A stretch of 41,453 bases of DNA from Octopus bimaculoides (GCF_001194135.2 NC_069002.1:11416349-11457801), one strand, 5' to 3'. Counted from the stretch's first letter, positions 33,786 through 34,744 are shown. Notes: a model not told the origin generated them from the sequence alone. A program made the numbers and translations.

Positions 33786-33962
33786 TTTTATTGCGTATTG
33801 CCGCTTTTGTTTATTTTGTAATTTTCCCATTACCATTTTCCTGAACCATCCATTGATTCATATGGTAAATACTATACATTGACAGTCGGAATTTAGCCAA
33901 AACATCCTGCGATTGAGTATTCGCCACTGTTGAGCATTAATTTCAAGCAAAACTAGACTAGT
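33786..33962 (+). ncRNA. Retrozyme-like monomer copy A (partial), HHR at 33921-33963
   Basis: Aligns with about 34426-34602. HHR reads CGCCA-CUGUUGA-GCAUUAAUUUCAAGC-AAAAC-UAGAC-UAGU (A6U, G12A). Confidence 0.75.
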
Positions 33963-34104
33963 TTCTTATGCTTTACTCTTGTATATTACTATAAATTCTA
34001 TATGGTTTGTTCAATGGCACATTAAGGAACTTTATAATGAGTACTACCGGATTACTTAGATAGATAGGTATATAAACAGACAGACAGATAGATAGATAAC
34101 ATAA

Positions 34105-34349
34105 CGAAGATTACATAACGAAGGCTGCTATAAGCAATATAAAACCTAAAAAGAAAAATTCAATTGTCACCAATTGTGACTGAGGGTGCAAGGTAGCACC
34201 TACATTGCTAGAAATACGAGCCAAAGACACTTCAAGCCGTAAAAAATGCACATGTCTATGCACTGACAGGGAAGATAATCGCCCCACAACGAGCGAGATT
34301 ACCATACTAGTCTACTTTCGCTTAAAAATTAAAGCTTATCAGTGGTGAC
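34105..34349 (-). ncRNA. Retrozyme-like monomer copy B (inverted, partial), HHR at 34298-34349
   Basis: GUCACCA-CUGAUAA-GCUU(UAAUUUUU)AAGC-GAAAG-UAGAC-UAGUA-UGGUAAU, then ~190 nt aligning with 34611-34740 and 34361-34450 (G8A, C15.2G). Confidence 0.8.
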
Positions 34350-34354
34350 TTTTA

Positions 34355-34744
34355 TTGCTAGCAATGTAGGTGCTACCCTGCACCGTCAGTCACAATTAGT
34401 GTCAACTTAATTCTTCATTTTTGCTTTTATATTGCTTATACCCGCTTTCATTATTTCATAATTTTTACATTACCATTTTGCTGAATCACCCATTGATTCA
34501 CATGGTAAATTCTATATTCTGACAGTCGGGATTTAGCCAAATCATCCAGCGATGGAGCAGTCACCACTGATGAGCCTTAATTTTAAGTGACGCTAGACTA
34601 GTATGGTGATCTCACTCGCTGTGGGACGATTATCGCCTATGTCAATGCTTAGATATGTCTTTTGCGGGTTTAAGAGTCATTGATTCTTATTCTAAGCAAT
34701 GTAAGTGCTACCTTGCACCCTCAGTCACAATTAATGATAATTAA
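34355..34744 (+). ncRNA. Retrozyme-like monomer copy C (more than one 335-nt unit), HHR at 34555-34613
   Basis: gcaatgta(g/a)gtgctacc recurs at 34361 and 34696 (period 335). HHR reads GAG-CA-GUCACCA-CUGAUGA-GCCUUAAUUUUAAGU-GACGC-UAGAC-UAGUA-UGGUGAU-CUC, with a 7+3-bp stem I and GAAAC mutated to GACGC. Confidence 0.8.

What the first reader, a model, noticed from the sequence alone, without database searches (positions are those of the whole stretch)
33786..34744. Retrozyme-like cluster: a 335-nt structured monomer with a type I hammerhead whose three-copy consensus is complete
Seen: three homologous copies (A +, B -, C +). Their core strands are CUGUUGA/CUGAUAA/CUGAUGA and AAAAC/GAAAG/GACGC. 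Each copy is broken at different positions, and majority rule gives canonical CUGAUGA and GAAAC. All share stem III ACUA(GAC)UAGU; B and C show a GUA triplet; copy C has stem I GUCACCA/UGGUGAU extended by GAG/CUC across a 2-nt bulge. Copy C repeats with a 335-nt period. The monomer has extra hairpins (taccat..tgaatca-cccat-tgattca..atggta; gcaa-t-gtag-gtg-ctac-c-ttgc; gtcac-aattg-gtgac in copy B; gattt-agcc-aaatc) and no ORF. Established: metazoan non-LTR retrozymes are tandem, few-hundred-nt, non-coding repeats with one type I HHR per unit that self-cleave to monomers and form abundant circRNAs. Inference: this is a decayed insertion of such a family in a cephalopod-type genome, with active copies elsewhere. 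I do not know whether this family has been described.
Basis: partly seen in the sequence, partly recalled or inferred. Interest (0 to 1): 0.9.

Follow-up and report, generated by a model that had tools for sequence, protein, structure and literature searches.

The report
Dead hammerhead-ribozyme repeat copies in octopus DNA
A 335-base non-coding repeat occurs four times in this octopus-type window, and its reconstructed ancestor carries a complete self-cutting hammerhead RNA motif like known animal "retrozymes", but every copy here is mutated and inactive, so this is an ordinary relic of a known kind of mobile element.

Summary
Three homologous copies are present: A + 33778-33963, B - 34095-34352, and C + 34346-34746 with a 335-nt period. 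I found a fourth fragment at 23910-24044.

No existing copy is a hammerhead. Rfam finds none, even at E<=10. Loosening a hammerhead descriptor enough to recover B or C gives about 0.8 and 8 chance hits per window.

The signal is in the consensus. Plain majority rule gives GUCACCA-CUGAUGA-GCnUUAAUUUUAAGC-GAAAC-UA(GAC)UA-GUA-UGGUnAU. This passes a strict type I descriptor, whose chance rate is 3-7e-5 per 335-nt unit.

Several features fit metazoan non-LTR retrozymes, which are non-autonomous elements thought to depend on Penelope-like elements:
- a closed 335-nt unit with 38% GC and no ORF
- a fold more stable than shuffled sequence (z = -3.5)
- a partial tandem joined to an inverted truncated copy
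- microsatellite flanks

The locus is dead. Each copy has one or two substitutions at conserved core positions, and no unit lies between two ribozymes.

I could reach no copies outside the window, so intact or active copies elsewhere remain untested. The host is octopod, because its repeats are shared with Octopus sinensis.

Verdict: probably a new member of a known kind, of low to moderate interest.

The parts
34346..34746 (+). Copy C: 1.18 units of the 335-nt repeat. In unit coordinates counted from the predicted cleavage site it runs 78-335 then 1-143. It holds one hammerhead relic.
34361..34695 (+). GC is 38%, there is no ORF, and the circular MFE is -81.6 kcal/mol (z = -3.45).
34555..34613 (+). 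Hammerhead relic in C. GAG 34555-57, CA bulge 34558-59, stem I 5' strand GUCACCA 34560-66, CUGAUGA 34567-73 (intact), imperfect helix II 34574-88, GACG in place of GAAA 34589-92 (A14C and A15.1G), helix III 34592-34602, A17 at 34603, predicted cleavage between 34603 and 34604, stem I 3' strand UGGUGAU 34604-10, CUC 34611-13.
34095..34352 (-). Copy B, inverted and head-to-head with C. In unit coordinates it runs about 289-335 then 1-206, so it crosses the same unit junctions as C. Its 5' end starts 1-3 nt before the stem I 5' strand.
34295..34349 (-). Hammerhead relic in B. GUCACCA 34349-43, CUGAUAA 34342-36 (G8A), helix II GCUU..AAGC 34335-20 (4 bp), GAAA 34319-16 (intact), helix III with a G.G mismatch 34316-06, A17 at 34305, and stem I 3' strand UGGUAAU 34304-298 (one C.A mismatch).
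33776..33963 (+). Copy A, about unit positions 149-335. Homology to the unit stops within 1 nt of the predicted cleavage site.
33920..33963 (+). Hammerhead relic in A. UUCGCCA 33920-26, CUGUUGA 33927-33 (A6U), helix II 33934-48, AAAA 33949-52 (G12A), helix III ACUA-GAC-UAGU 33952-62, U17 at 33963. There is no stem I 3' strand.
23910..24044 (+). Fourth, more decayed copy with an internal deletion, about unit positions 115-248. It starts right after a (TA)n run and does not reach the hammerhead.
34346..34350 (.). Head-to-head junction of B and C. The 4-5 nt TGAC(T) can be assigned to either copy (microhomology).
34058..34099 (.). (GATA/GACA)n microsatellite abutting the 3' end of B.
34746..34780 (.). 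(TG)n(CA)n microsatellite abutting the 3' end of C.

Best explanation
These are four old, dead insertions of a roughly 335-nt non-coding retroelement. Its ancestral sequence carried one canonical type I hammerhead ribozyme per unit. That makes it a cephalopod member of the metazoan non-LTR retrozyme class, a group of non-autonomous elements thought to depend on Penelope-like elements (PLEs).

Inferred life cycle of the active family:
1. Multimeric transcripts cleave themselves after GUA, at the position equivalent to window 34603/34604.
2. [quoted passage not shown] Helix I holds the two ends together, and a host RNA ligase circularises them.
3. A reverse transcriptase supplied in trans, probably from a PLE, copies the circular or multimeric RNA. 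This yields cDNAs with arbitrary start and stop points that are often longer than one unit.
4. The cDNAs integrate at microsatellites as partial tandems with an adjacent inverted truncated copy.

At this locus nothing works. Every hammerhead relic has one or two substitutions at conserved core positions (A: A6U and G12A; B: G8A; C: A14C and A15.1G). No unit is flanked by two ribozymes.

Shown here: the repeats, the 335-nt closure, the consensus motif, the composition, the fold stability and the insertion architecture. Inferred: self-cleavage, circular RNA, mobilisation by a PLE, and the existence of intact copies elsewhere.
For: 1. The majority consensus of the three copies is GUCACCA CUGAUGA GCnUUAAUUUUAAGC GAAAC UA GAC UA GUA UGGU(G/A)AU. 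It passes a strict type I descriptor (I = 7, II = 4, III = 4 bp). The chance rate is 3-7e-5 per unit.

2. Every core column has the canonical base in at least 2 of 3 copies, and each copy's defects fall at different positions.

3. Optional features that are typical of natural hammerheads are also present: N7 = U, G10.1-C11.1, and C15.2-G16.2. These are read from the sequence, and their typicality is established knowledge of hammerhead consensus.

4. The hammerhead fold of the consensus costs only 0.2 kcal/mol more than the MFE (-12.5 against -12.7). Helices I and II have pair probabilities of 0.8-1.0.

5. The helix III segment ACUAGACUAGU is a 10/11 palindrome, and its intermolecular duplex is -11.5 kcal/mol. 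This allows the dimeric 'double hammerhead' mode known for weak-helix-III type I motifs (PMC7761336).

6. The unit is closed at 335 nt. Both C and B run through both junctions.

7. The unit has 38% GC and no ORF, and its fold has z = -3.45 on the + strand. Published retrozyme features are 150-450 bp, GC below 45%, non-coding and self-paired (PMC7229834).

8. The locus combines a partial tandem, an inverted 5'-truncated copy and microsatellite flanks. This is the insertion pattern described for PLEs (PMC8557442). The review model for retrozymes expects cDNAs longer than one unit from circular templates (PMC7761336).

9. Copy A ends within 1 nt of the predicted cleavage site.

10. There are four copies in 35.5 kb of non-N sequence, at two separate loci, which indicates a dispersed family.

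11. Cephalopods are known to hold Hammerhead_1 loci and Penelope elements (PMC6962438).
Against: - Rfam finds no hammerhead in any copy, at gathering score or at E<=10.
- The consensus rests on only three copies, and on two for the stem I 3' strand. It could not be run through the Rfam model.
- Each single copy is within chance expectation for a relaxed descriptor.
- The thermodynamic z-scores of the hammerhead segments are not significant, -0.9 to +0.75. Helix III has a pair probability of only about 0.26.
- The hammerhead region is not clearly better conserved than the rest: 86% against 78% for B-C, and 76% against 81% for A-C.
- No compensatory base changes are seen.
- The locus has no array with two or more ribozymes.
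- No copy outside the window was found, no PLE coding sequence lies in the window, and no RNA data are available.
- How many windows and repeat families the first stage screened is unknown. That weakens the 3-7e-5 figure.
Confidence: 0.72

Rival explanations
1. An ordinary non-autonomous repeat (SINE-, MITE- or satellite-like) whose three-copy consensus resembles a hammerhead only by chance. No ribozyme was ever involved.
For: There is no Rfam hit. Relaxed descriptors give 0.8 to 8 chance hits per window, and 8 unrelated ones are seen. One lies right beside copy A at 33736-33783. The fold z-scores of the motif are not significant. The number of families the first stage screened is unknown.
Against: A strict motif is expected in only 3-7e-5 of 335-nt units. 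The consensus came from plain majority rule with no choices made at core positions. The typical optional features N7 = U, G10.1-C11.1 and C15.2-G16.2 are present as well. Unit size, GC content, closed periodicity and insertion architecture all match hammerhead-bearing repeats independently of the motif.
Confidence: 0.1
2. The pieces are fragments of the terminal pseudo-LTR of a full-length, protein-coding Penelope-like element. They are not a stand-alone 335-nt element.
For: PLEs carry hammerheads in their pseudo-LTRs. They insert as partial tandems with an inverted 5'-truncated copy at microsatellites (PMC8557442). In Xenopus, retrozyme families are sister groups to PLE pseudo-LTRs (bioRxiv 10.64898/2026.07.22.740005).
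Against: The sequence closes on itself at 335 nt in both B and C, with no room for a 3-4 kb body. No RT or GIY-YIG ORF lies between the flanking assembly gaps, 33524-36075. The only RT in the window is a Ty3/gypsy-type fragment 33 kb away. PLE hammerheads are minimal variants that lack helix III (PMC7761336), whereas this one has a 4-bp helix III.
Confidence: 0.1
3. A remnant of a local satellite or segmental duplication-inversion that spread by DNA-level rearrangement and not by retrotransposition. The hammerhead was either real but irrelevant to spreading, or never functional.
For: Three copies sit within 1 kb, and the classical newt hammerhead repeat was first described as satellite DNA (PMC7229834). 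There is microhomology at the inversion junction. No target-site duplication was recognised.
Against: A fourth copy lies 10 kb away with different end points. The copies have different truncation points and each abuts a microsatellite. Divergence of 20-30% between neighbouring copies argues against a recent local duplication.
Confidence: 0.05

Closest known systems
Metazoan non-LTR retrozymes (Cervera & de la Pena 2020, PMC7229834), for example the Mytilus galloprovincialis 350-390 bp repeats and the axolotl/newt 330-350 bp satellite-2 repeats
   Same: The unit is a few hundred nt (335) with low GC (38%) and no coding capacity. The consensus has one type I hammerhead per unit. Helix I closes the monomer, helix III is weak, and the copies are head-to-tail and longer than one unit.
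   Different: Here only 1.18 units are in tandem and there is a single ribozyme per array. All ribozymes are mutated. There is no evidence of RNA, circles or cleavage. No sequence similarity to a described family could be checked.
Penelope-like elements and their pseudo-LTR hammerheads (Cervera & de la Pena 2014; Craig et al. 2021, PMC8557442)
   Same: The insertion architecture matches: a partial tandem, an adjacent inverted 5'-truncated copy, and microsatellite flanks. Both carry a type I hammerhead, and the palindromic helix III segment would permit dimeric cleavage.
   Different: There is no RT/GIY-YIG ORF and the whole unit is 335 nt. The hammerhead has a 4-bp helix III, unlike the minimal PLE variant.
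Rfam Hammerhead_1 (RF00163), of which 235 loci are reported in the giant squid genome (PMC6962438)
   Same: The consensus has the same core, CUGAUGA...GAAAC...GUA, and the same helix order with helix I open.
   Different: None of the copies in the window reaches even E = 10 against Rfam.

Membership tests
Type I hammerhead ribozyme | Conserved core C3 U4 G5 A6 N7 G8 A9 / G12 A13 A14 / A15.1-U16.1 / H17 | tested here: not met
   The existing copies fail. A has A6U and G12A, B has G8A, and C has A14C and A15.1G. Only the three-copy majority consensus meets the core, with 0 mismatches.
Type I hammerhead ribozyme | Three helices around the core, with helix I open and helices II and III closed by loops | tested here: met
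   The consensus has I = 7 bp plus a 3-bp extension, II = 4 bp and III = 4 bp. Copy C keeps I and III, and copy B keeps I (one mismatch) and II. The hammerhead fold of the consensus lies 0.2 kcal/mol above the MFE.
Type I hammerhead ribozyme | Match to the curated covariance model (Rfam RF00163 or related hammerhead models) | tested here: not met
   There is no hammerhead match at gathering score or at E<=10 in 1.7-kb and 346-nt sub-windows. The consensus sequence could not be submitted to this tool.
Type I hammerhead ribozyme | Loop 1 - loop 2 tertiary contacts | not tested
   A CA bulge in stem I and a 7-8 nt U/A-rich loop 2 exist, but no model was applied. Mussel retrozyme hammerheads also lack the archetypal contacts (PMC7229834).
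Type I hammerhead ribozyme | Site-specific self-cleavage | not testable with these tools
   This needs in vitro transcription of the consensus, as a monomer and as a dimer.
Metazoan non-LTR retrozyme | Head-to-tail repeats of 150-450 bp | tested here: inconclusive
   The 335-nt period is closed in both C and B. However, only 1.18 and about 0.75 units are present, and there is no dimer or longer array.
Metazoan non-LTR retrozyme | One type I hammerhead per unit, so that units are flanked by cleavage sites | tested here: inconclusive
   There is one hammerhead relic per unit in the consensus, but no unit at this locus is flanked by two relics.
Metazoan non-LTR retrozyme | Low GC (below 45%), no ORF, and no LTR/PBS/PPT | tested here: met
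   GC is 38%. The longest consensus ORF is 41 aa with no Pfam match. No tRNA-like part is present.
Metazoan non-LTR retrozyme | Stable, highly self-paired monomer | tested here: inconclusive
   The circular MFE is -81.6 kcal/mol with z = -3.45, and 0 of 300 shuffles fold as well. Only 57% of bases are paired, and this is a decayed copy.
Metazoan non-LTR retrozyme | Expressed as linear and circular monomer RNA | not testable with these tools
   No transcriptome data can be reached.
Metazoan non-LTR retrozyme | Many dispersed genomic copies, co-occurring with PLEs | tested here: inconclusive
   There are two loci and four copies in 35.5 kb. No copy was found in 20 kb of O. sinensis, and none in any searchable collection. 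Penelope elements in cephalopods are known only from the literature (PMC6962438, PMC8557442).
Penelope-like element (autonomous) | ORF with RT and a GIY-YIG endonuclease between pseudo-LTRs | tested here: not met
   No ORF of 75 aa or more without N or microsatellite content lies in 33524-36075, and the unit closes at 335 nt.

The most novel reading that the evidence does not exclude
The relics mark an undescribed, high-copy cephalopod retrozyme family. Intact members elsewhere in Octopus genomes would still self-cleave, possibly as double hammerheads through the palindromic ACUAGACUAGU helix III, and would produce abundant circular RNAs of about 335 nt.
Probability: 0.3. Interest if true: 0.45.

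Novelty: new member of a known kind. Interest (0 to 1): 0.3.

Why it matters
If the family is real and still active elsewhere, it would extend ribozyme-processed circular RNAs to cephalopods. It would also give a defined sequence for probing octopus RNA for circles of about 335 nt, and a non-autonomous partner for studying Penelope-like elements in these repeat-rich genomes. This locus itself has no function to offer. It is useful mainly as an annotation: an unclassified repeat gets a class. It also shows that a ribozyme too decayed for Rfam to detect can be recovered from a consensus of a few copies.

Tried and rejected
1. Rfam cmscan on the whole window at gathering score, and on two sub-windows at E<=10, found no hammerhead. 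The MIR2599 hit (29.5 bits against a gathering score of 120) is only the B/C inverted repeat. The Plastid-ccsA hit (E 0.13) is the taccat...atggta hairpin and is chance.

2. I searched for external copies by exact pattern. These were a 24-mer and a 22-mer in viral contigs, two patterns of about 20 nt in metagenome contigs and one in genome contigs. All returned 0.

3. I tried to reach other copies through spuriously called ORFs, using the 66-aa frame of B, which includes the longest + strand consensus ORF. There were no hits.

4. I sampled related genomes through transposon proteins. A 20-kb Octopus sinensis locus (L001) shares the window's SINE-like repeats and mariner, but not this unit. Four ENA loci (L004-L007) share only the mariner or the RT, so they are not close relatives. 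There are no Rfam hits in any of these loci. An exact look-up of the window's mariner ORF found nothing.

5. I looked for compensatory changes in the extra hairpins and in extended stem I. With three copies there are only disruptive single changes, so this has no power (reading).

6. I asked whether the hammerhead region is better conserved than the rest. There is no consistent signal.

7. A tRNA-derived SINE head was ruled out, with 0 tRNA-like genes.

8. No target-site duplications were recognised by eye around the B-C composite or around A.

Full report
**What is in the sequence**

The region 33776-34746 holds three homologous, non-coding segments.
- Copy A lies on the + strand at 33776-33963.
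- Copy B lies on the - strand at 34095-34352.
- Copy C lies on the + strand at 34346-34746.

The repeat finder shows a 56-nt direct repeat, 34346-34401 and 34681-34736, spaced exactly 335 nt apart. It also shows four inverted-repeat pairs that tie B to C.

A profile built from the copies finds a fourth, more decayed copy at 23910-24044 (E 5e-19).

Both C and B run without a break through both possible unit boundaries. The repeat is therefore closed on itself at 335 nt. In coordinates counted from the predicted cleavage site:
- C covers 78-335 then 1-143.
- B covers about 289-335 then 1-206.
- A covers about 149-335.
- The fourth copy covers about 115-248.

Pairwise identity is 70-80%.

**The hammerhead claim, copy by copy**

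- A has CUGUUGA and AAAAC.
- B has CUGAUAA and GAAAG.
- C has CUGAUGA and GACGC.

In standard hammerhead numbering these are A6U plus G12A in A, G8A in B, and A14C plus A15.1G in C. All of these fall at conserved core positions, where substitutions are known to abolish or greatly reduce cleavage. G8 and G12 are the catalytic general acid and base. This is established knowledge from core mutagenesis and from the full-length crystal structures.

Rfam reports no hammerhead in the window at gathering score. It reports none at E<=10 in a 1.7-kb or a 346-nt sub-window either.

I wrote an RNAmotif-style type I descriptor to measure the chance rate.
- At zero core mismatches the window has no hit.
- At the looseness needed to recover B (<=1 core mismatch, one mismatch per stem), about 0.8 hits are expected per window by chance.
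- At the looseness needed to recover C (<=2 core mismatches), about 8 are expected, and 8 unrelated hits are seen.

So no single copy is evidence of a ribozyme on its own.

**The consensus**

The unedited MAFFT majority consensus reads GUCACCA CUGAUGA GCnUUAAUUUUAAGC GAAAC UA GAC UA GUA UGGU(A/G)AU. Every core column carries the canonical base in at least two of three copies. No choice had to be made at any core position.

The consensus passes the strict descriptor with helix I = 7 bp, helix II = 4 bp and helix III = 4 bp. With the least favourable choices at the two undecided columns it still passes, at I = 4 and II = 2. In two sets of 20 Mb of first-order Markov sequence, trained on the window and on the repeat, such motifs occurred 1 and 2 times. 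That is 3-7e-5 per 335-nt unit counting both strands.

The consensus also has features my descriptor did not ask for but natural hammerheads usually show: N7 = U, a G10.1-C11.1 pair and a C15.2-G16.2 pair.

Its hammerhead fold costs -12.5 kcal/mol against an MFE of -12.7. Helices I and II have pair probabilities of 0.8-1.0, and helix III about 0.26. Helix III is therefore weak, as in many animal type I hammerheads (PMC7761336).

The helix III segment ACUAGACUAGU is a 10-of-11 palindrome. It can form a -11.5 kcal/mol intermolecular duplex. This would allow the dimeric 'double hammerhead' mode described for newt and PLE motifs.

There are caveats. The fold z-scores of the 60-nt segments are not significant. 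The consensus rests on three copies, and on only two for the stem I 3' strand. I do not know how many repeat families the first stage looked at.

**The unit and its insertion pattern**

The unit has 38% GC. Its circular MFE is -81.6 kcal/mol, with z = -3.45 and 0 of 300 dinucleotide shuffles folding as well. The - strand gives z = -2.3. In that fold helix I and its extension bring the two ends of the cleaved monomer together.

The longest open frame in the consensus trimer is 41 aa. The small ORFs have no Pfam match. No tRNA-like part is present.

These properties match the published description of metazoan non-LTR retrozymes: 150-450 bp repeats, GC below 45%, non-coding and self-paired, with one type I hammerhead per unit. 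Mussel repeats, for example, are 350-390 bp (PMC7229834).

The local architecture has four elements:
- a partial tandem (C)
- an inverted truncated copy joined head-to-head to it (B), with 4-5 nt of microhomology at 34346-34350
- a (GATA)n run on one side and a (TG)n(CA)n run on the other
- AT-rich or (TA)n runs directly before A and the fourth copy

This is the pattern Craig et al. describe for Penelope-like elements: partial tandems, an upstream inverted 5'-truncated copy and a microsatellite insertion bias (PMC8557442). PLEs are the proposed mobilisers of animal retrozymes (PMC7229834, PMC7761336, bioRxiv 10.64898/2026.07.22.740005). The review model also expects cDNAs longer than one unit from a circular template (PMC7761336), which fits C and the arbitrary end points.

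Copy A loses homology within 1 nt of the predicted cleavage site. With about eight copy ends, a coincidence this close has roughly a 7% chance, so it is only weak support.

**Host**

The window is a gap-ridden draft with 17 N runs (14% N). It has 37% GC and is full of microsatellites.

Its mariner relic and its Ty3/gypsy RT fragment have Octopus proteins as their best named relatives. A SINE-like repeat present five times in the window matches several places in a 20-kb Octopus sinensis locus at 73-83%. The host is octopod, but I did not establish the species.

**What could not be done**

No eukaryotic genome collection was available. Exact-pattern scans of the viral, metagenome and prokaryote collections found nothing. 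A search through spuriously called ORFs found nothing. Sampling about 100 kb of related loci through transposon proteins found no other copy of the unit and no Rfam hammerhead.

Whether intact or active copies exist is therefore untested.

**Verdict**

The most likely reading (about 0.72) is a set of dead relics of a hammerhead-bearing, roughly 335-nt retrozyme-type repeat in an octopus genome. The rivals are a chance consensus (0.1), fragments of a PLE pseudo-LTR (0.1) and a DNA-level satellite remnant (0.05).

The class is well known, including in molluscs, and Hammerhead_1 loci have been counted in a cephalopod genome (PMC6962438). So this is at most a new member of a known kind, and this locus is non-functional. 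The interest is low to moderate.

Noticed in passing
window 23910-24044 (+): A fourth, more decayed copy of the 335-nt unit (about unit positions 115-248, with an internal deletion).
   Followed up: partly
window 7848-8660 (-): A mariner/SETMAR-like transposase relic (Pfam Transposase_1, 7.5e-18). Its best named relatives are Octopus sinensis and O. bimaculoides SETMAR-like proteins at 62-68% aa. It is about 80% identical at the nucleotide level to a copy on O. sinensis CM016871.1.
   Followed up: partly
window 826-1242 (-): A Ty3/gypsy-type reverse transcriptase fragment (RVT_1, 2.5e-9). Its best named relatives are O. bimaculoides 'K02A2.6-like' proteins at 64-67% aa.
   Followed up: partly
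window 30389-30542, 30906-31264, 31528-31786, 35880-36075, 41058-41252: A SINE-like interspersed repeat present at least five times in the window. It matches three or more places in the 20-kb O. sinensis locus L001 at 73-83% identity, and this is what identifies the host as octopod.
   Followed up: partly
window 34182-34386 (+): An Rfam MIR2599 match (29.5 bits against a gathering score of 120, E 0.004). It is only the long hairpin formed by the inverted B and C copies and is not a microRNA.
   Followed up: yes
window 33736-33783 (+): An AT-rich string next to copy A passes the hammerhead descriptor with 2 core mismatches. It is one of about 8 such chance hits expected per window.
   Followed up: yes
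window 34100-34124: A short tandem duplication, CATAACGAAG-ATTA-CATAACGAAG, at the 3' end of copy B where it meets the (GATA)n run.
   Followed up: no
window 32768-33523: A 756-nt assembly gap lies about 250 nt upstream of copy A, so further copies of the repeat could be hidden there. Overall 17 N runs make up 14% of the window.
   Followed up: no
L004-L007 (ENA ERZ25067889, ERZ25069865, ERZ21867824): Long ENA contigs carry related mariner or gypsy-RT genes but share none of the window's other repeats. They appear to be unrelated eukaryotic genomes filed among metagenome assemblies.
   Followed up: no
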